A DNA stretch of 64,000 nt, taken from positions 148,567,772 to 148,631,771 of the forward strand of contig NC_052153.1 of the NCBI RefSeq assembly GCF_902713615.1, read 5' to 3'. This document shows positions 27,964 to 49,574 of the stretch, piece after piece. Each line of letters begins with the position of its first letter. The stretch's first letter is position 1. The stretch is from Scyliorhinus canicula (Eukaryota). The translations under genes and the position numbers were made by a program. Under the pieces are notes generated by a model that saw only the letters and a program-made list of their open reading frames with translations, made no database searches and was not told where the DNA came from.

Positions 27964-28544
27964 TGTGACCATCAAGTAAAAAGGATGTTAAAGGGTTGAG
28001 GGAATGGAATGAGAGCAGATTTCTGTATCTGTTAGTGCAGAGACAGCAAAGATGAGTGTGTAAAACCTTGTCAACTGAGACAATGGGCATTGGAATGTGA
28101 AAGAGCTGACTCAGGAGCACGAGAGGGAAGGAGATAAGGAAGTTGGACCTGATGGACGGATAGGATAAGAAAACCGTTAGCAGCAGCAGTATTAGCTAAT
28201 GATTATGTCATAGTCACCACCCTACCTTAGGATAATAATTCCATATAAGTACATGTTCTGGATCCTTGCCAAATCATTGGTGTATCTAGGAATTTAAGGG
28301 GACCACCTCTAAGCTGTGATTGTATAAAGGGACAGTCCGTACTCTGGGACTTTGGCACTTCTCGAAGGTGGTTCCCCGACTACTTAGAGATTTGTCCCAG
28401 CCGTGAATAAACGAATATTCGTTACCAACGTGTTCGAGTGTTTTATTTCTGGACTGACAGACGGCTATGTGAAAGCGCAATTCACAGTACCTTCTGACCT
28501 TCCAGAATCCAGCCCCAGAATGCTGACTCCATGGGGCAGTCACA
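27964..28544 (+). mobile_element. Probable solo LTR
   Basis: TGTGAC...GTCACA termini, TATAAA-like box near 28324, AATAAA near 28406; no clear TSD. Confidence 0.5.
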
Positions 28545-28740
28545 ACAACACAGCCTAGAAAACAGGTAAAGACTCCACAGAGACATAACCCTTAACCAGG
28601 AGCAGGGTGGGGCATAGGGAAAAGGTGGTGCCAGAACAAAAGTGACGTAAATAGCCCAAAAGTAAATTTGGTGTAAATAGTTTGACTGTTAACAGTTATT
28701 AAAAAGTATATATTTTGGATTGTGGAGGGGGCAGTTAATG

Positions 28741-30242
28741 CAGTGTTTTTCAAACCTTTTTTTCCTGAGACCCACTTTTACCAACCGGCGGAACTTTGGG
28801 ACCCATGCCGGTTGACGTTCGCGAGACATGCCGGGTTATGTTCGCGACCTACCCCGGCCGACCTTCACAACACACCATTATTGCTTACTTTTACTGCGGC
28901 AGGTGAGCCTTCTTGGTCCTCACGATCTGTCTTGCTTCATCATTCAATATTACATTTTTGCTAAGAATTTTAACTGATGATTTAAGTTCTTGCTGAATGC
29001 TTTGAAAAAAATCAAGAAGTTTGTCCTCGAACTATCCATGCATAGTCTTCAATTGCCTTTGAAGATTTGAGCGTTTTAAACTTCATTTGTCAGTACTTCA
29101 CTGCATATAACATACGGGCTTTACATTCTGCTTTGCATTGGCACAATTAAAGCCATACCTCAAGAAATCATCTTTATACTGCTTTGTTCCCGATTTCAGT
29201 TTCTTCTTAATTGTTTGATCACCAGAGGCCCTGGACCTCGGGATACAGCTCACACCAGCATTGGTTTGTCCTTGCATGGGCTCTCCTGAGAAACTCTTTC
29301 CAGCAGATTTAGTTGTGAGTTCCTGGTCTGTTTGTATCTCTGGCCCTCTTTATCTCATTACAAAATGACACATCTTCAGTTCTTCACACAGCCCTGTTGC
29401 TTTCTTGCTGGCAGCTACAAAAAGGAGGAATCTCACCTCTATGATTTTTCACCCAAAGCATTGACGTGCTGCACACATGACCTTCTCTCTGCTGCTGCCT
29501 CTGGCTGAAAGACTCATTCTTCATAGTTAAAGGACCTTTGCGGCTGGCATTCTTTTTTTTTAAACTTTGAAACTATTTCGAACACCTAAATTTTACAAAT
29601 TTATGACTTTTTAAACTGGTAAAAATTAAAACAACTTCAGTTGAACATGTGCATCTTTACTTTTATACACAAACTTGTTTTAAATATATTCCCATATATC
29701 CCAGGGAAATGAAGTGACTTGTCAAACACACACAATGTCACACTATCTCTTACTGGTTTCACTGCATTGCACTATCCAAACATCCAAGTCACCTTTGGCT
29801 CCATTCTCACCAAAAGCTCGGACTTCCTGTTTTCCAGAGAGTGTCGACACAAAGTGATGACTGTAGGTTTCTTCCAGTGTTCCCATGTCAGCCCCCTACA
29901 CTGGCCTTGTTTAATCAGTATTCCCACAAACCTGGCCTGGCTTCCTCTCACTGTATCCAACCCAGTCACAGGGCGAGCAATAGATCAGAGCCACCACTCT
30001 TAGTATCGTGTTTACGTGGACGCCCGTCAGCCAGCCCAAGTCCGTCCATGTCTCCCCCCCACCCACCACTCTGCGCGCAGTGACCAGCACACAGTCCAGC
30101 CTCACGCCGCCCACTCCCTCAAACACACAACCAATTGGGGACTGCCTGCGGACGGCATTCTTAAAAGCCACGATCGGGAACGCCACAACCGATCACTCCA
30201 CGACCCACCTGCGGGACGCGACCCTGAGTTTGAAAAACCCCG
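28741..30242 (-). mobile_element. hAT/Charlie-type DNA transposon (non-autonomous, BED-finger remnant) containing a retrocopy
   Basis: TIRs CAGTGTTTTTCAAAC / GTTTGAAAAACCCCG; 8-bp TSD agttaatg / agttaata; gcgaccc-type subterminal repeats; minus-strand remnant KQYKDDFLRYGF...KPVC...LQRQLKTMH...DKLLDFF at about 29000-29190. Confidence 0.88.
29555..30146 (-). pseudogene. Processed SDF2/SDF2L1-like (MIR domain) retrocopy
   Basis: Minus-strand frames give VTGLDTV, GILIKQGQ..LT, HGNTGRNL and SHHFVSTLSGKQEVRAFGENGAKGDLDVWIVQC (29862-29764), versus recalled SDF2 LTHVNTGRNLHSHHFTSPLSGNQEVSAFGEEGEGDYLDDWTVLC; short poly(A); 16-bp TSD, 14/16 identical. Confidence 0.82.
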
Positions 30243-30279
30243 AGTTAATAGAGTACAAATGCTAACGACGGATGTAGAC

Positions 30280-31130
30280 AATGTTGCAACTGTGCCATCA
30301 GAAGGCAGATGCTGGAGATTCTCTACAGCAGATAAGCAACTCAAGAGGAGATGTGCCTGTTCAATTACCGACCTTGTACATATTATACATACCAGAGCCT
30401 GCCCACAGTTTCTCTTTGCATGATTCTAAACCTGGAAATTTGCTCAAATATGATAGCAATGATGGTGGCATACTAAACAACGATTGGTACCATACAACGA
30501 GCACCCACAGTCCACAACGGCAACAGGCAGACGGACATCTCAACTTGCCAGGGCTTCTCAACAACAGCCTTACTCAAGAAGGATAGCGATAACGGCACTG
30601 CATAACACGGCTCCTACTCCATTTTCAAGCCTGAAGACCCGCTGAAAGACGTGGCACAATAACATTTTGAAGTACCGAGCAGCCTCGTGTCTCTTTACTA
30701 AACACAGCAACTCCGAGTCAGTTCATTTGTTCAATGTGTTGGGCCAACCATTAACCATATCATTAGCACCCAGAGACTCAACAAAACTTCTGCAGACTTC
30801 GACTCCGCACTGAAAGGCTTCATGGAAGCCCGCTAGGCATTACTAAGATTGTTTACTGTTCAGGGCTATAACTACAGCTCTCACAAATCAAAGGTAGTAG
30901 TTGACTTATTTCTTACTACTTGTGCTCTGCAGCTTGTCCTCACCAATGGGAGCTCACAACAAACGATTACCTCAGTCAGGCTGTCCCAACCTTGCAAGTT
31001 CAGCCCACCACCCCACGACACACTGAGGCATCAACAAGGCCCATTCATCTTGCAGGGCCAAATGTGATAGCCCCACCTACACCAACGCCCACCAAACTGG
31101 TGGGGCAAAGCGCTACAGATAATTTATAGA
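30280..31130 (+). mobile_element. Highly degraded Gypsy-like relic
   Basis: gag-like WHNNILKYRAASCLFTK near 30655; otherwise weak. Confidence 0.3.
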
Positions 31131-45815: not shown

Positions 45816-46695
45816 GTGAGGGACACCATCGATGTCCCTGCTGATTTCATCTGTGGGAAGTGCACCCAACTCCAGCTCCTCAGAAACTGTGTTAGGGACC
45901 TGGAGCTTGAGCTGGATGAACTTCGGATCATTCAGGAGGCAGAGGGGGTCATAGATAGGAGCTTCAGGGAAGTAGTTACACCAAAGACTGATGGGTAACT
46001 GTAAGAGGGACTGGGAAGAAGCAGTCAGTGCAGGGACCCCCTGCGGTCGTTTCCCTGAGTAACAAGTATACCGTTTTGGATACTTGTTTGGGGGGGGGGG
46101 GGACTTACCAGGGGTAAGCCATGGGGTACGGGCCTCTGGCACGGAGTCTGTCCCTGTTGCTCAGAAGGGAAGGGGGGAAAGGAGTAGAACATTAGTAATT
46201 GGGGACTCAATAGTCAGGGGCACAGATAGGAGATATTGTGGGAGCGAGAGAGACTCACGTTTGGTATGTTGCCTCCCAGGTGCAAGGGTACGTGATGTCT
46301 CGGATCGTGTTTTCCGGGTCCTTAAGGGGGAGGGGGAGCAGCCCCAAGTCGTAGTCCACATTGGCACTAACGACATAGGTAGGAAAGGGGACAAGGATGT
46401 CAGGCAGGCCTTTAGGGAGCTAGGATGGAAGCTCAGAGCGAGAACAAACAGAGTTGTTATCTCTGGGTTGTTGCCCGTGCCACGTGATAGTGAGATGAGG
46501 AATAGGGAGAGAGAGCAATTAAACACGTGGCTACAGGGATGGTGCAGGCAGAAGGGATTCAGATTTCTGGATAACTGGGGCTCTTTCTGGGGAAGGTGGG
46601 ACCTCTATAGACAGGATGGTCTACATCTGAACCTGAGGGGCACCAATATCTTGGAGGGGAGATTTGTTAGTGCTCTTTGGGGGGGTTTAAACTAA
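45816..46695 (+). pseudogene. CR1 ORF1 (Zn-finger/coiled coil plus SGNH esterase), frameshifted
   Basis: FICGKC, LELELDEL; esterase blocks IGDSIVRG, HIGTND, DGLHLN; frame breaks near 45990 and the G-run at about 46090. Confidence 0.88.
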
Positions 46696-49574
46696 TTCAG
46701 CAGGGGCATGGGAACCTGGATTGTAGTTTTGGGGTACGGGAGATTGAGAGTATAGAGGTCAGGAGCACAGATTTGACTTCGCAGGAGGGTGCCAGTGTTC
46801 AGGTAGGTGGTTTGAAGTGTGTCTACTTCAATGCCAGGAGTATACAAAATAAGGTAGGGGAACTGGCAGCATGGGTTGGTACCTGGGACTTCGATGTTGT
46901 GGCCATTTCAGAGACATGGATAGAGCAGGGACAGGAATGGTTGTTGCAGGTTCCGGGGTTTAGGTGTTTTAGTAAGCTCAGAGAAGGGGGCAAAAGAGGG
47001 GGAGGTGTGGCGCTGCTAGTCAAGGACAGTATTACGGTGGCGGAAAGGATGCTAGATGGGGACTCTTCTTCCGAGGTAGTATGGGCTGAGGTTAGAAACA
47101 GGAAAGGAGAGGTCACCCTGTTGGGAGTTTTCTATAGGCCACCTAATAGTTCTAGGGATGTAGAGGAAAGGATGGCGAAGATGATTCTGGAAAAGAGCGC
47201 AAGTAACAGGATAGTTGTTATGGGAGACTTTAACTTTCCAAATATTGACTGGAAAAGATATAGTTCGAGTACATTAGATGAATCGTTCTTTGTACAATGT
47301 GTGCAGGAGGGTTTCCTGACACAATATGTTGACAGGCCAACAAGAGGCGAGGCCACATTGGATTTGGTTTTGGGTAATGAACCAGGCCAGGTGTTAGATC
47401 TGGAGGTAGGTGAGCACTTTGGAAACAGTGACCACAATTCGGTGACCTTTACGTTAGTGATGGAAAGGGATAAGTATACCCCGCAGGGAAAGAGTTATAG
47501 CTGGGGGAAGGGCAATTATGATGCCATTAGACATGACTTAGGATGTGTAGGTTGGAGAAGTAGGCTGCAAGGGTTGGGCACACTGGATATGTGGAGCTTG
47601 TTCAAGGAACAGCTATTGCATGTTCTTGATAAGTACGTACCAGTCAGGCAGGGAGGAAGGGGTCGAGCGAGGGAACCGTGGTTTACCAAAGAAGTGGAAT
47701 CTCTTGTTAAGAGGAAGAAGGAGGCCTATGTGAAGATGAGGCGTGAAGTTTCAGTTGGGGCGCTTGATAGTTACAAGGAAGCGAGGAAGGATCTAAAGAG
47801 AGAGCTAAGACGAGCAAGGAGGGGACATGAGAAGTCTTTGGCAGGTAGGATCAAGGAAAACCCAAAAGCTTTCTATAGGTATGTCAGGAATAAAAGAATG
47901 ACTAGGGTAAGAGTAGGGCCAGTCAAGGACAGTGGTGGGAAGTTGTGTGTGGAGGCTGAGGAGATAAGCGAGATACTAAATGAATACTTTTTGTCAGTAT
48001 TCACTCAGGAAAAAGATAATATTGTGGAGGAGAATGCGGAGACCCAGGCTATTAGAATAGATGGCATCGAGGTGCGTAGGGAAGAAGTGTTGGCAATTCT
48101 GGACAAGGTGAAAATAGATAAGTCCCCGGGGCCTGATGGGATTTATCCTAGGATTCTCTGGGAAGCCAGGGAAGAGATTGCTGAGCCTTTGGCGTTGATT
48201 TTTATGTCATCATTGGCTACAGGAATAGTGCCAGAGGACTGGAGGATAGCAAATGTGGTCCCTTTCTTCAAGAAGGGGAGTAGAGATAACCCCGGTAACT
48301 ATAGGCCGGTGAGCCTCACGTCTGTTGTGGGTAAATTCTTGGAGAGGATTATAAGAGATACGATTTATAATCATCTAGATAGGAATAATATGATTAGGGA
48401 TAGTCAGCATGGTTTTGTGAAGGGTAGGTCATGCCTCACAAACCTTATCGAGTTCTTTGAGAAGGTGACTGAACAGGTAGACGAGGGTAGAGCAGTTGAT
48501 GTGGTGCATATGGATTTCAGTAAAGCATTTGATAAGGTTCCCCACGGTCGTATATTGCAGAAAATACAGAGGCTGGGGATTGAGGGTGATTTAGAGATGT
48601 GGATCAGAAATTGGCTAGTTGAAAGAAGACAGAGGGTGGTGGTTGATGGCAAATGTTCAGAATGGAGTTCAGTTACGAGTGGCATACCACAAAGATCTGT
48701 TCTGGGGCCGTTGCTGTTTGTCATTTTTATAAATGACCTAGAGGGCACAGAAGGTTGGGTGAGTAAATTTGCAGACGACACTAAAGTCGGTGGAGTTGTA
48801 GACAGTGTGGAAGGATGTTGCAGGTTACAGAGGGACATAGATAAGCTGCAGAGCTGGGCTGAGAGGTGGCAAATGGAGTTTAATGTAGAGAAGTGTGAGG
48901 TGATTCACTTTGGAAAGAATAACAGGAATGCGGAATATTTGGCTAATGGTAAAATTCTTAGCAGTGTGGATGAGCAGAGGGATCTCGGTGTTCATGTACA
49001 TAGATCCCTGAAAGTTGCCACCCAGGTTGATAGGGTTGTGAAGAAGGCCTATGGTGTGTTGGCCTTTATTGGTAGCGGGATTGAGTTCCGGAGCCATGAG
49101 GTCATGTTGCAGCTGTACAAAACTCTGGTACGGCCGCATTTGGAGTATTGCGTACAGTTCTGGTCGCCTCATTATAGGAAGGACGTGGAAGCTTTGGAAC
49201 GGGTGCAGAGGAGATTTACCAGGATGTTGCCTGGTATGGAGGGAAAATCTTATGAGGAAAGGCTGATGGACTTGAGGTTGTTTTCGTTAGAGAGAAGGTT
49301 AAGAGGTGACTTAATAGAGGCATGCAAAATGATCAGAGGGTTAGATAGGGTGGACAGTGAGAGCCTTCTCCCGCGGATGGAGGTGGCTAGCACGAGGGGA
49401 CATAGCCTTAAATTGAGGGGTATTAGATATAGGACAGACGTCAGAGGTAGGTTTTTTACGCAAAGAGTGGTGAGGCCGTGGAATGCCCTACCTGCAACAG
49501 TAGTGAACTCGCCAACATTGAGGGCATTTAAAAGTTTATTGGATAAGCATATGGATGATAATGGCATAGTGTAG
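46677..49574 (+). CDS. CR1 ORF2: APE endonuclease plus reverse transcriptase (open, with substitutions in conserved motifs)
   Basis: FNARS, SETW, YRPP, GDFN, SDH; KSPGPDG, NYRPVSLTS, DFSKAFD, PQRSVLGP (PQGS in the neighbouring copy), FADD. Confidence 0.92.
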   Translation: MGGFKLIQQGHGNLDCSFGVREIESIEVRSTDLTSQEGASVQVGGLKCVYFNARSIQNKVGELAAWVGTWDFDVVAISETWIEQGQEWLLQVPGFRCFSKLREGGKRGGGVALLVKDSITVAERMLDGDSSSEVVWAEVRNRKGEVTLLGVFYRPPNSSRDVEERMAKMILEKSASNRIVVMGDFNFPNIDWKRYSSSTLDESFFVQCVQEGFLTQYVDRPTRGEATLDLVLGNEPGQVLDLEVGEHFGNSDHNSVTFTLVMERDKYTPQGKSYSWGKGNYDAIRHDLGCVGWRSRLQGLGTLDMWSLFKEQLLHVLDKYVPVRQGGRGRAREPWFTKEVESLVKRKKEAYVKMRREVSVGALDSYKEARKDLKRELRRARRGHEKSLAGRIKENPKAFYRYVRNKRMTRVRVGPVKDSGGKLCVEAEEISEILNEYFLSVFTQEKDNIVEENAETQAIRIDGIEVRREEVLAILDKVKIDKSPGPDGIYPRILWEAREEIAEPLALIFMSSLATGIVPEDWRIANVVPFFKKGSRDNPGNYRPVSLTSVVGKFLERIIRDTIYNHLDRNNMIRDSQHGFVKGRSCLTNLIEFFEKVTEQVDEGRAVDVVHMDFSKAFDKVPHGRILQKIQRLGIEGDLEMWIRNWLVERRQRVVVDGKCSEWSSVTSGIPQRSVLGPLLFVIFINDLEGTEGWVSKFADDTKVGGVVDSVEGCCRLQRDIDKLQSWAERWQMEFNVEKCEVIHFGKNNRNAEYLANGKILSSVDEQRDLGVHVHRSLKVATQVDRVVKKAYGVLAFIGSGIEFRSHEVMLQLYKTLVRPHLEYCVQFWSPHYRKDVEALERVQRRFTRMLPGMEGKSYEERLMDLRLFSLERRLRGDLIEACKMIRGLDRVDSESLLPRMEVASTRGHSLKLRGIRYRTDVRGRFFTQRVVRPWNALPATVVNSPTLRAFKSLLDKHMDDNGIV

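What the first reader, a model, noticed from the sequence alone, without database searches (positions are those of the whole stretch)
28741..30242. hAT/Charlie transposon carrying a nested SDF2-like host-gene retrocopy
Seen: a 1.5-kb element with hAT TIRs (CAGTGTTTTTCAAAC / GTTTGAAAAACCCCG), an 8-bp TSD (agttaatg/agttaata) and a BED-finger transposase remnant. Inside it is a roughly 590-bp insert whose minus strand encodes MIR-domain segments closely matching SDF2/SDF2L1 (HGNTGRNL-SHHFVSTLSGKQEVRAFGENG..DLDVW). The ORF track misses this because of small frameshifts. Established: SDF2/SDF2L1 are ER chaperone cofactors, and TIR elements can amplify captured gene fragments (Pack-type elements). 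Inference: if the retrocopy entered an active element, the composite may have been spread by cut-and-paste transposition, a retro-then-DNA-transposon route of gene-fragment amplification.
Basis: partly seen in the sequence, partly recalled or inferred. Interest (0 to 1): 0.78.

Follow-up and report, generated by a model that had tools for sequence, protein, structure and literature searches.

The report
Shark hAT transposon carrying SDF2L1 retrocopy
A dead, intron-free copy of the shark gene SDF2L1 landed inside a cut-and-paste (hAT) transposon, and this same copy now occurs tens to hundreds of times in catshark genomes, so the transposon probably spread it, which is rare in vertebrates.

Summary
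A 1,502-bp element (28741-30242) has imperfect terminal inverted repeats and a 7/8 matching 8-bp target duplication. More than 100 contigs from other copies end at the same two termini.

Inside it lies a 592-bp insert (29555-30146, minus strand) with a short poly-A tail. The insert has its own 16-bp duplication (14/16) at a TCTT/AAAA nick site.

The cargo is SDF2L1, not SDF2. It matches catshark SDF2L1 at 53 of 67 residues with 5 frameshifts. Exon 2 joins exon 3 exactly where whale-shark intron 2 lies, followed by 3'UTR and poly-A. About 243 bp are deleted internally, removing the C-terminal third of the coding sequence.

New here: the cargo is multi-copy. In single-animal DNA runs of two species, 42-80 distinct contigs cover it. 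Six contigs at single-copy depth share both the splice junction and the internal deletion, so all descend from one retrocopy.

The scan noted a second SDF2L1-in-hAT locus on other DNA of this genome (s1-198244). I conclude that the composite was probably spread by hAT transposition (about 0.68). I could not see contigs from other copies bridging the hAT/cargo junctions.

The "BED-finger transposase remnant" was not confirmed by any tool.

The parts
28733..28740 (.). Left copy of the 8-bp hAT target-site duplication (AGTTAATG)
   Evidence: (D16): 7/8 match with 30243-30250, directly abutting both termini.
28741..28755 (+). Left terminal inverted repeat (CAGTGTTTTTCAAAC; starts CAGTG, which fits YARNG)
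   Evidence: I1. In one search table 7, 105 (X2) and 134 (X10) contigs of other copies diverge into unrelated flanks at 28741.
28741..30242 (-). Non-autonomous hAT-type element, 1,502 bp, no intact transposase ORF. The minus strand is the sense of both the presumed transposase remnant and the cargo.
   Evidence: The part 28745-29450 belongs to a family at hundreds to thousands of times single-copy depth in three runs.
28894..29349 (-). Presumed N-terminal transposase remnant, broken by stops. Identity unverified.
   Evidence: Stop-free pieces are listed. No hit in Pfam, word search, Atlas or PDB. The resemblance to Charlie-type transposase N-termini is from memory only.
29539..29554 (.). Left copy of the 16-bp target-site duplication of the nested retrocopy
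   Evidence: (D8): TGCGGCTGGCATTCTT against TGCGGACGGCATTCTT, 14/16.
29555..30146 (-). Nested processed SDF2L1 retrocopy (592 bp), a pseudogene
29555..29561 (-). Poly-A tail remnant (T7 on the plus strand; 9 if the TT shared with the duplication is counted)
29564..29756 (-). Part derived from the SDF2L1 3'UTR
   Evidence: 29695-29564 matches whale-shark locus L004 8039-8171 (74%, E 1e-16). 29728-29706 matches L004 7942-7964. 29756-29740 matches L004 7928-7944. All lie downstream of the stop codon at L004 7886-7888.
29752..29826 (-). Part derived from exon 3 (aa about 123-147). It ends at an internal deletion of about 243 bp that removes aa about 148-214 and the stop codon.
   Evidence: 29828-29752 matches L004 7608-7684 (83%, E 3e-18). 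One search shows the microhomology at the deletion joint.
29827..29971 (-). Part derived from exon 2, joined to exon 3 with no intron. Carries a 27-bp deletion at 29954/29955, probably private to this copy.
   Evidence: L004 6860-7041 matches 29971-29827. The 568-bp whale-shark intron 2 is absent between 29827 and 29826.
29972..30146 (-). 5' part of the retrocopy, probably derived from exon 1 and strongly decayed
   Evidence: colinear but weak alignment (score 43 against 33.8 +/- 5.8 for shuffles). Not significant on its own.
30147..30162 (.). Right copy of the 16-bp duplication of the retrocopy, followed by AAAA (nick site TCTT/AAAA)
   Evidence: D8.
30228..30242 (-). Right terminal inverted repeat (GTTTGAAAAACCCCG on the plus strand)
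   Evidence: I1. In one search table 7, 132 contigs (X10) diverge at 30240, and their consensus reads TG as the last two bases.
30243..30250 (.). Right copy of the 8-bp hAT target-site duplication (AGTTAATA)

Best explanation
A two-step 'retro, then DNA' history.

Step 1 (shown): in an ancestor of catsharks, an SDF2L1 messenger RNA was reverse-transcribed by a poly-A-dependent (L1-type) LINE machinery. It was inserted at a TCTT/AAAA site in the subterminal region of a hAT-type transposon, on the transposase-sense strand. This produced a 16-bp duplication. The copy lacks intron 2. It also lacks about 243 bp of exon 3, removed at a microhomology either during reverse transcription or soon after.

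Step 2 (inferred, about 0.68): the element still had working ends. A hAT transposase supplied by autonomous relatives cut and pasted the composite, with net copy gain as in other hAT families. This produced roughly 35-280 copies in organism A and 70-500 in organism C (rough figures).

The copy in this window is one old member. It sits at a single-copy site with its own 8-bp duplication, and at least its right hAT end is also present at the orthologous site of the second species. Since insertion it has probably collected deletions of its own (27 bp and about 64 bp). It has five frameshifts in all, at least one of them (the 2-bp one at 29864/5) inherited from the family ancestor. It encodes nothing functional.
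For: Nested retrocopy:
- 14/16 direct repeat flanking a poly-A-ended insert.
- Exon 2 is joined to exon 3 exactly at the whale-shark intron 2 position, followed by colinear 3'UTR up to the poly-A.
- 53/67 identity to catshark SDF2L1, score 202 against 43.5 +/- 6.4.
- Shark SDF2L1 proteins score 196-202; SDF2 paralogues score 137-152.
- The catshark parent gene spans 9.4 kb, so it has introns.

Multi-copy cargo:
- Flanks lie at depth about 4-6. The cargo (29585-30004) lies at 140-537 (X1), 403-1539 (X2) and 403-2901 (X10).
- At 29747, 42, 56 and 80 different contigs read T where the window reads C.

One common ancestor (table 8):
- Records 4, 5, 15, 19, 20 and 21, from three runs and two species, each have depth 3.8-5.7 and are 12-17% unlike the window.
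- Each spans both the splice junction (29826/7) and the deletion joint (about 29752).
- Only 8-25% of the depth at 29861 carries the parental 'TG', so most copies share the window's frameshift.

Link to the hAT element:
- Contig counts on the hAT side of the left junction (29472: 8/18/35) match those on the cargo side (29590-29595: 6-11/23-28/22-23).
- No 'empty-site' joint (29554 to 30163) appears among the listed joints, although joints carried by a single contig are listed.
- Contig counts peak mid-cargo rather than at the poly-A end, which is unlike 5'-truncated LINE-made copies.
- Both SDF2L1 copies noted in the 1,348 scanned windows lie between hAT ends. Two in about 86 Mb extrapolates to roughly 100 per genome, assuming a genome of about 4 Gb (size from memory, not measured here). 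That is in the range given by depth.
Against: - No contig from another copy was seen to bridge either hAT/cargo junction. Table 8 shows only 32 of more than 20,000 pieces, and the joints and loose-ends tables are truncated.
- The tool warns that summed contig depth is not a copy number.
- Depth dips at 29501-29584 and at 30005-30088 (only 7-17 times single copy). Many cargo copies may therefore lack the parts next to the junctions, or those parts are too diverged to lay at 80%.
- The second locus (s1-198244) is an unchecked note whose sequence I could not read.
- The window's own 8-bp duplication (AGTTAATG) does not fit the nTnnnnAn / nTCTAGAn preference.
- No transposase homology could be shown for the element.
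Confidence: 0.68

Rival explanations
1. The nested insertion is a one-off at this locus and the composite never moved. The many SDF2L1-derived copies elsewhere were made independently by LINE-mediated retroposition of one aberrant transcript, for example from an expressed, already deleted master retrocopy.
For: The insert has every mark of LINE-mediated retroposition. No bridging contig of another copy was seen. Depth in the hAT stretch next to the insert (29472: 50/149/270) is lower than in the cargo.
Against: Contig counts peak mid-cargo and fall towards the poly-A end, the opposite of 5' truncation (table 3). Most copies share a frameshift and the 243-bp deletion, so the functional gene is not the source. 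The only other SDF2L1 copy noted in this genome also lies between hAT ends. No empty-site joint is listed (table 5).
Confidence: 0.2
2. The composite was multiplied as DNA but not by transposase, for example by segmental duplications or as a passenger inside a larger repeat.
For: Flanks of other copies show a partly conserved palindromic context (TTGTATCC-TCTAGA-GGATACAA, agreement about 0.4, table 7). This could mean that many copies sit inside another repeat.
Against: This copy sits at a single-copy site with its own 8-bp duplication. Flank consensus agreement is only 0.39-0.42, so most flanks differ. The central TCTAGA fits a hAT target preference rather than a shared larger unit. I recall that preference from the MER1/Charlie literature; only the general nTnnnnAn pattern was checked, in PMC10368747.
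Confidence: 0.09
3. It is not a real feature: chance inverted repeats around a chance similarity to SDF2.
For: The 15-nt inverted repeat alone is within chance expectation. Pfam finds nothing on the pieces.
Against: Both duplications are far beyond chance. The alignment to SDF2L1 lies about 25 sd above shuffles. blastn against the whale-shark gene gives E-values of 1e-16 to 6e-21 in colinear blocks. More than 100 contigs confirm the family termini.
Confidence: 0.01

Closest known systems
Pack-TIR / Pack-hAT elements of animals (Tan et al. 2021, PMC8277862), e.g. Pack-hAT-N8_XT of Xenopus tropicalis
   Same: A non-autonomous hAT element with a host-gene fragment between its ends, apparently multiplied with that cargo.
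   Different: In that survey only 4 of 370 animal Pack-TIRs were multicopy; the one worked example, Pack-hAT-N8_XT, sits on three chromosomes. Here the cargo is in tens to hundreds of copies. The cargo here is spliced, has a poly-A tail and its own 16-bp duplication, so it entered by retroposition, not by gap filling or fork switching. That survey's pipeline discarded intronless cargo, so cases like this one were excluded by design.
Ordinary processed pseudogene nested in a transposon
   Same: Intron loss, poly-A tail, 16-bp duplication at a TCTT/AAAA site, and decay by frameshifts.
   Different: An ordinary nested pseudogene is single-copy. This one shares its splice junction and an internal deletion with dozens of paralogous copies.
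Plant Pack-TYPE elements (Pack-MULE, Pack-CACTA, Pack-hAT; PMC8903248)
   Same: TIR elements that shuffle and amplify coding fragments.
   Different: I know plant capture as a DNA-level process (from memory; the paper's text was not read here). The host, the superfamily context and the route of entry all differ.
Other gene-carrying hAT families noted by this scan in the same genome (HNRNPU, ZNF, CFTR exon 1; s1-216878, s1-219842, s1-278439, s1-246648)
   Same: Same genome, same superfamily, cargo between hAT ends, multi-copy. The HNRNPU cargo is also spliced.
   Different: A different cargo gene. Here the retro-insertion scar (poly-A and 16-bp duplication) is still visible inside the element, which shows how the cargo got in. 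Those notes are unchecked by me.

Membership tests
hAT superfamily DNA transposon | 8-bp target-site duplication | tested here: met
   AGTTAATG / AGTTAATA, 7/8, directly abutting both termini.
hAT superfamily DNA transposon | Short terminal inverted repeats beginning 5'-YARNG | tested here: met
   The left end reads CAGTG. The right end of this copy is mutated (CGGGG), but the consensus of other copies ends ..TG (table 7). The repeats match 13/15. The YARNG rule is from memory.
hAT superfamily DNA transposon | Target preference nTnnnnAn (PMC10368747) | tested here: inconclusive
   This copy's duplication, AGTTAATG, does not fit (G at position 2, T at position 7). The flank consensus of more than 100 other copies reads C-TCTAGA-C/G, which does fit (table 7).
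hAT superfamily DNA transposon | Homology to a hAT transposase (BED finger, RNase-H-like core, hAT dimerisation domain) | tested here: inconclusive
   The pieces at 29101-29349 and 28894-29031 gave nothing in Pfam, word search, Atlas or PDB. The pieces are short and broken. A read-through with X has no reference and was not sent.
hAT superfamily DNA transposon | Multi-copy family with the same termini at different sites | tested here: met
   105-134 contigs diverge at 28741 and 132 at 30240, with low flank agreement (0.39-0.42). Internal depth is hundreds to thousands of times the flank depth.
LINE-mediated processed retrocopy | Introns of the parent gene are absent | tested here: met
   Exon 2 joins exon 3 at 29827/29826, where the whale-shark gene has a 568-bp intron. 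The intron 1 position is probably also crossed, but that alignment is weak.
LINE-mediated processed retrocopy | 3' poly-A tail after the 3'UTR | tested here: met
   3'UTR homology runs to 29564 and is followed by 7-9 A.
LINE-mediated processed retrocopy | Target-site duplication of about 7-20 bp at a TTTT/AA-like nick site | tested here: met
   16 bp, 14/16 match. The nick site is TCTT/AAAA on the priming strand. The consensus site is from memory.
Pack-type TIR element (cargo-carrying, amplified) | Host-gene fragment between the ends of an element without a working transposase | tested here: met
Pack-type TIR element (cargo-carrying, amplified) | Several copies with the same cargo and the same element/cargo junctions, each with its own duplication | tested here: inconclusive
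   The cargo is multi-copy and monophyletic. Junction-bridging contigs of other copies were not seen. The second locus is known only from a note.
Pack-type TIR element (cargo-carrying, amplified) | Cargo acquired at DNA level (gap repair or template switching), usually with introns | tested here: not met
   The cargo is spliced, poly-A tailed and flanked by its own 16-bp duplication. It works like a Pack element, but the cargo got in by another route.
Functional SDF2L1 paralogue | Open reading frame with MIR domains and a C-terminal HDEL | tested here: not met
   Five frameshifts, loss of aa about 148-217 including HDEL, and no Pfam MIR hit on the pieces.

The most novel reading that the evidence does not exclude
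In catsharks, a processed mRNA copy that landed in an active hAT element was then amplified by cut-and-paste transposition to roughly 50-500 copies, far beyond the few multicopy Pack-TIRs reported for vertebrates. Together with the HNRNPU and other cargo families noted in this genome, this would make 'retro-then-DNA' a recurrent way for shark genomes to scatter spliced exon blocks. Published Pack-TIR surveys excluded this class by design.
Probability: 0.6. Interest if true: 0.62.

Novelty: new variant of a known kind. Interest (0 to 1): 0.5.

Why it matters
Amplification of gene fragments by DNA transposons is common in plants but looks rare and low-copy in animals. The main animal survey found 4 multicopy cases among 370 and discarded intronless cargo (PMC8277862).

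This locus keeps the scar of how the cargo entered: a poly-A tail and a 16-bp duplication inside the element. The cargo is also multi-copy in two species. If the junctions prove to be shared, it documents a clean two-step mechanism in which LINE machinery loads a spliced exon block into a DNA transposon and transposase then spreads it. That would suggest that surveys filtering out intronless cargo under-count such families.

The copy itself is a dead pseudogene with no sign of function, so the interest is mechanistic and genomic, not physiological.

Tried and rejected
1. Pfam on nine stop-free pieces found no MIR, BED or hAT domain. The pieces are too short and decayed.
2. The word search on the 50-aa cargo piece and on the 83-aa presumed transposase piece found no candidates. 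The length limit excludes full-length relatives.
3. The Atlas and PDB gave nothing usable for the 83-aa piece.
4. PDB with the cargo piece gave only weak hits to distant SDF2-like proteins: 1t9f at E 0.015 and 3mal at E 0.79.
5. A Logan transcript of an unnamed species (L001-L003) aligned over only 130 bp, which at first suggested a tiny fragment. This was overturned once catshark SDF2L1 protein and the whale-shark gene were used.
6. 'SETSKR' looked like in-frame 'SGTSWER'. I rejected that: those bases come from the 3'UTR beyond the deletion joint.
7. I considered an alternative intron as the cause of the 243-bp gap. I rejected it: there is no GT..AG, and there is microhomology at the joint instead.
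8. The catshark parent-gene DNA could not be fetched because the file is too large.
9. The window holds no other copy of the element.
10. Rfam and tRNA scans of the surroundings were blank.
11. Findings look-ups by sequence were blank.
12. A read-through of the broken transposase with X at the stops was not sent, because it has no reference.

Full report
**1. What is there**

The window is vertebrate DNA. Earlier notes of this scan call the genome the small-spotted catshark. My own evidence agrees at the level of shark: the best protein matches are shark SDF2L1 proteins.

At 28741-30242 lies a 1,502-bp element. Its ends are CAGTGTTTTTCAAAC and the reverse complement CGGGGTTTTTCAAAC, a 13/15 match. 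They are flanked directly by AGTTAATG and AGTTAATA.

The inverted repeat by itself is not beyond chance: 3.5 matches with up to 3 mismatches are expected in the window. The 7/8 duplication at exactly these bases is beyond chance. The ends are also confirmed independently. When contigs of four public DNA runs were laid on the stretch, 105-134 contigs of other copies left the alignment at 28741 and 132 at 30240, running into flanks that mostly differ (agreement 0.39-0.42, table 7).

The bases next to those ends read C-TCTAGA-C/G. This fits the hAT target pattern nTnnnnAn (PMC10368747). The flanks of this copy lie at single-copy depth, about 4 to 6 in the three larger runs. The body 28745-29450 lies at hundreds to thousands of times that depth.

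**2. The nested insert**

A 16-nt direct repeat, TGCGGCTGGCATTCTT at 29539-29554 and TGCGGACGGCATTCTT at 30147-30162 (14/16), brackets 592 bp (D8).

On the minus strand the insert ends in 7-9 A. The priming strand reads TCTT/AAAA at the nick. From established knowledge, this is the usual signature of target-primed reverse transcription by an L1-type endonuclease.

**3. What the cargo is**

Family scans of the stop-free pieces were blank and the word search was blank. I therefore ran the exhaustive protein search with the 50-aa piece. It gave 22 hits, most of them SDF2/SDF2L1-type proteins by sequence and by the six source names I looked up. The best had E 3e-9.

A follow-up search returned catshark SDF2L1 (XP_038667991.1, P0034). 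A frameshift-aware alignment of this protein to the minus strand gives:
- aa 79-150 aligned to 29959-29752;
- 53/67 identical, with five frameshifts;
- score 202 against 43.5 +/- 6.4 for shuffled protein.

Six shark SDF2L1 proteins score 196-202. SDF2 paralogues score 137-152. The parent is therefore SDF2L1, not SDF2.

**4. It is a processed copy**

The catshark parent gene spans 9.4 kb, but its DNA could not be fetched. The whale-shark gene (L004) has three coding exons: aa 1-57, 58-122 and 123-214.

The insert aligns to L004 in colinear blocks:
- exon 2 (L004 6860-7041) to 29971-29827;
- exon 3 (L004 7610-7684) to 29826-29752, with the 568-bp intron missing to the base;
- 3'UTR (L004 7928-8171) to 29756-29564, followed by the poly-A tail.

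Between the second and third blocks about 243 bp are missing: aa about 148-214, the stop codon and the start of the UTR. The joint shows microhomology and has no GT..AG, so this is a deletion or a template jump, not a splice.

The 5' 175 bp (29972-30146) align only weakly to exon 1 (score 43 against 33.8 +/- 5.8). I take them as probably exon 1, decayed.

Relative to the parent, this copy also has a 27-bp deletion at 29954/5 and about 64 bp missing near 29700. These are probably private to this copy, because the alignments of family contigs break at about those places (table 8).

**5. The new point: the cargo is multi-copy and monophyletic**

In single-animal DNA runs, the cargo (29585-30004) lies at 140-537 (X1), 403-1539 (X2) and 403-2901 (X10). 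Flank depth is 4-6. The tool warns that summed contig depth is not a copy number, so I lean on contig counts instead. At 29747, 42, 56 and 80 different contigs read T where this copy reads C. Similar counts hold at 29759, 29820 and 29635-29661.

Six listed contigs come from three runs and two species (records 4, 5, 15, 19, 20, 21). Each is at about single-copy depth and is 12-17% unlike the window. Each spans both the exon 2/3 junction and the 243-bp deletion joint.

Only 8-25% of the depth at 29861 carries the parental 'TG'. The rest share the window's frameshift.

These copies therefore do not come from repeated retroposition of the working gene. They descend from one retrocopy that was multiplied after it had mutated.

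**6. How it was multiplied**

The retrocopy sits between hAT ends that belong to a proven mobile family, so transposition of the composite is the simplest route. Five points support it.
- Contig counts just left of the junction (29472: 8/18/35) match those just right of it (29590-95: 6-11/23-28/22-23).
- No empty-site joint (29554 to 30163) is among the listed joints, although joints carried by one contig are listed (table 5).
- Counts peak mid-cargo, not at the poly-A end as 5'-truncated LINE products would.
- Pairwise divergence of cargo contigs (10-17%) is close to, and slightly below, that of the hAT body (16-19%).
- The scan's only other SDF2 note in 1,348 windows of this genome is again a retrocopy 'between the TIRs of a hAT/Charlie element', read by its follow-up as SDF2L1 (s1-198244).

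On the last point, two loci in about 86 Mb extrapolate to about 100 per genome, assuming a genome of roughly 4 Gb (size from memory). That lies in the range suggested by depth. The earlier follow-up said its case was ordinary 'unless the transposon moved with this cargo, which could not be tested'. The present data speak to exactly that.

What is missing is direct sight of other copies' junctions. The single read-laying run is spent, its tables are truncated, and the large shark assemblies cannot be read with these tools. I put 0.68 on composite transposition, 0.20 on independent retroposition from a mutated master, and 0.09 on other DNA-level duplication.

**7. Age**

A 797-nt contig of organism C lies on 30208-30742 at 93% identity and begins inside the right hAT end. 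The insertion at this site is therefore older than the split of the two species (record 16).

Two contigs of organism C join 30151 to 30202 at about single-copy depth. They may be the ortholog with a 50-bp deletion. If so, the cargo's 5' end was already there. I leave this open.

**8. What was not confirmed**

The 'BED-finger transposase remnant' has no tool support. The hAT assignment rests on the ends, the 8-bp duplication and the family's target pattern.

**9. Comparison with what is known**

Tan et al. 2021 (PMC8277862) found 370 Pack-TIRs in 100 animal genomes. Only four were multicopy; their worked example, a hAT in Xenopus, spread to three chromosomes. They discarded intronless cargo as retroduplicates.

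This element works like a Pack-hAT, but the cargo entered by retroposition, and the scar of that entry is preserved. Its copy number seems one to two orders of magnitude higher than the published vertebrate cases. I file it as a new variant of a known kind.

Noticed in passing
window 28241-28492 (left boundary not determined): The stretch just left of the element is a very high-copy repeat in organisms A and B (about 900-2,100 times flank depth). It has zero depth in organism C, although C holds the neighbouring single-copy DNA. This looks like a lineage-specific, probably young, repeat family. There is no tRNA or Rfam hit.
   Followed up: partly
flanks of other family copies, seen at window 28741 and 30240 (table 7): Consensus flanks of other copies form a palindrome around the target: TTGTATCC-TCTAGA-GGATACAA, with agreement of about 0.4. 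Either the target preference extends beyond the 8 bp, or many copies sit inside another repeat.
   Followed up: no
window 28745-29450 versus 29450-29554 and 30147-30242: The hAT body left of about 29450 is 5-50 times more abundant than the part next to the cargo, and the left end has about 4-7 times the depth of the right end. This suggests a much larger family of shorter deletion derivatives that share only the left two thirds.
   Followed up: no
window 28800-28870 and 30165-30235: Both subterminal regions keep many CpGs and short repeated motifs (for example TTCGCGA twice, and CCGG-containing units). They may be transposase-binding subterminal repeats.
   Followed up: no
window 46677-46725: Another first-reader note on this window proposes a programmed -1 frameshift joining CR1 ORF1 to ORF2 (s1-207431). 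I did not look at it.
   Followed up: no
runs X9 (organism B) versus the window: Contigs of organism B match the window with 0 differences over 139 and 165 bases. B is therefore the same species as the source, or a very close relative under another label.
   Followed up: no
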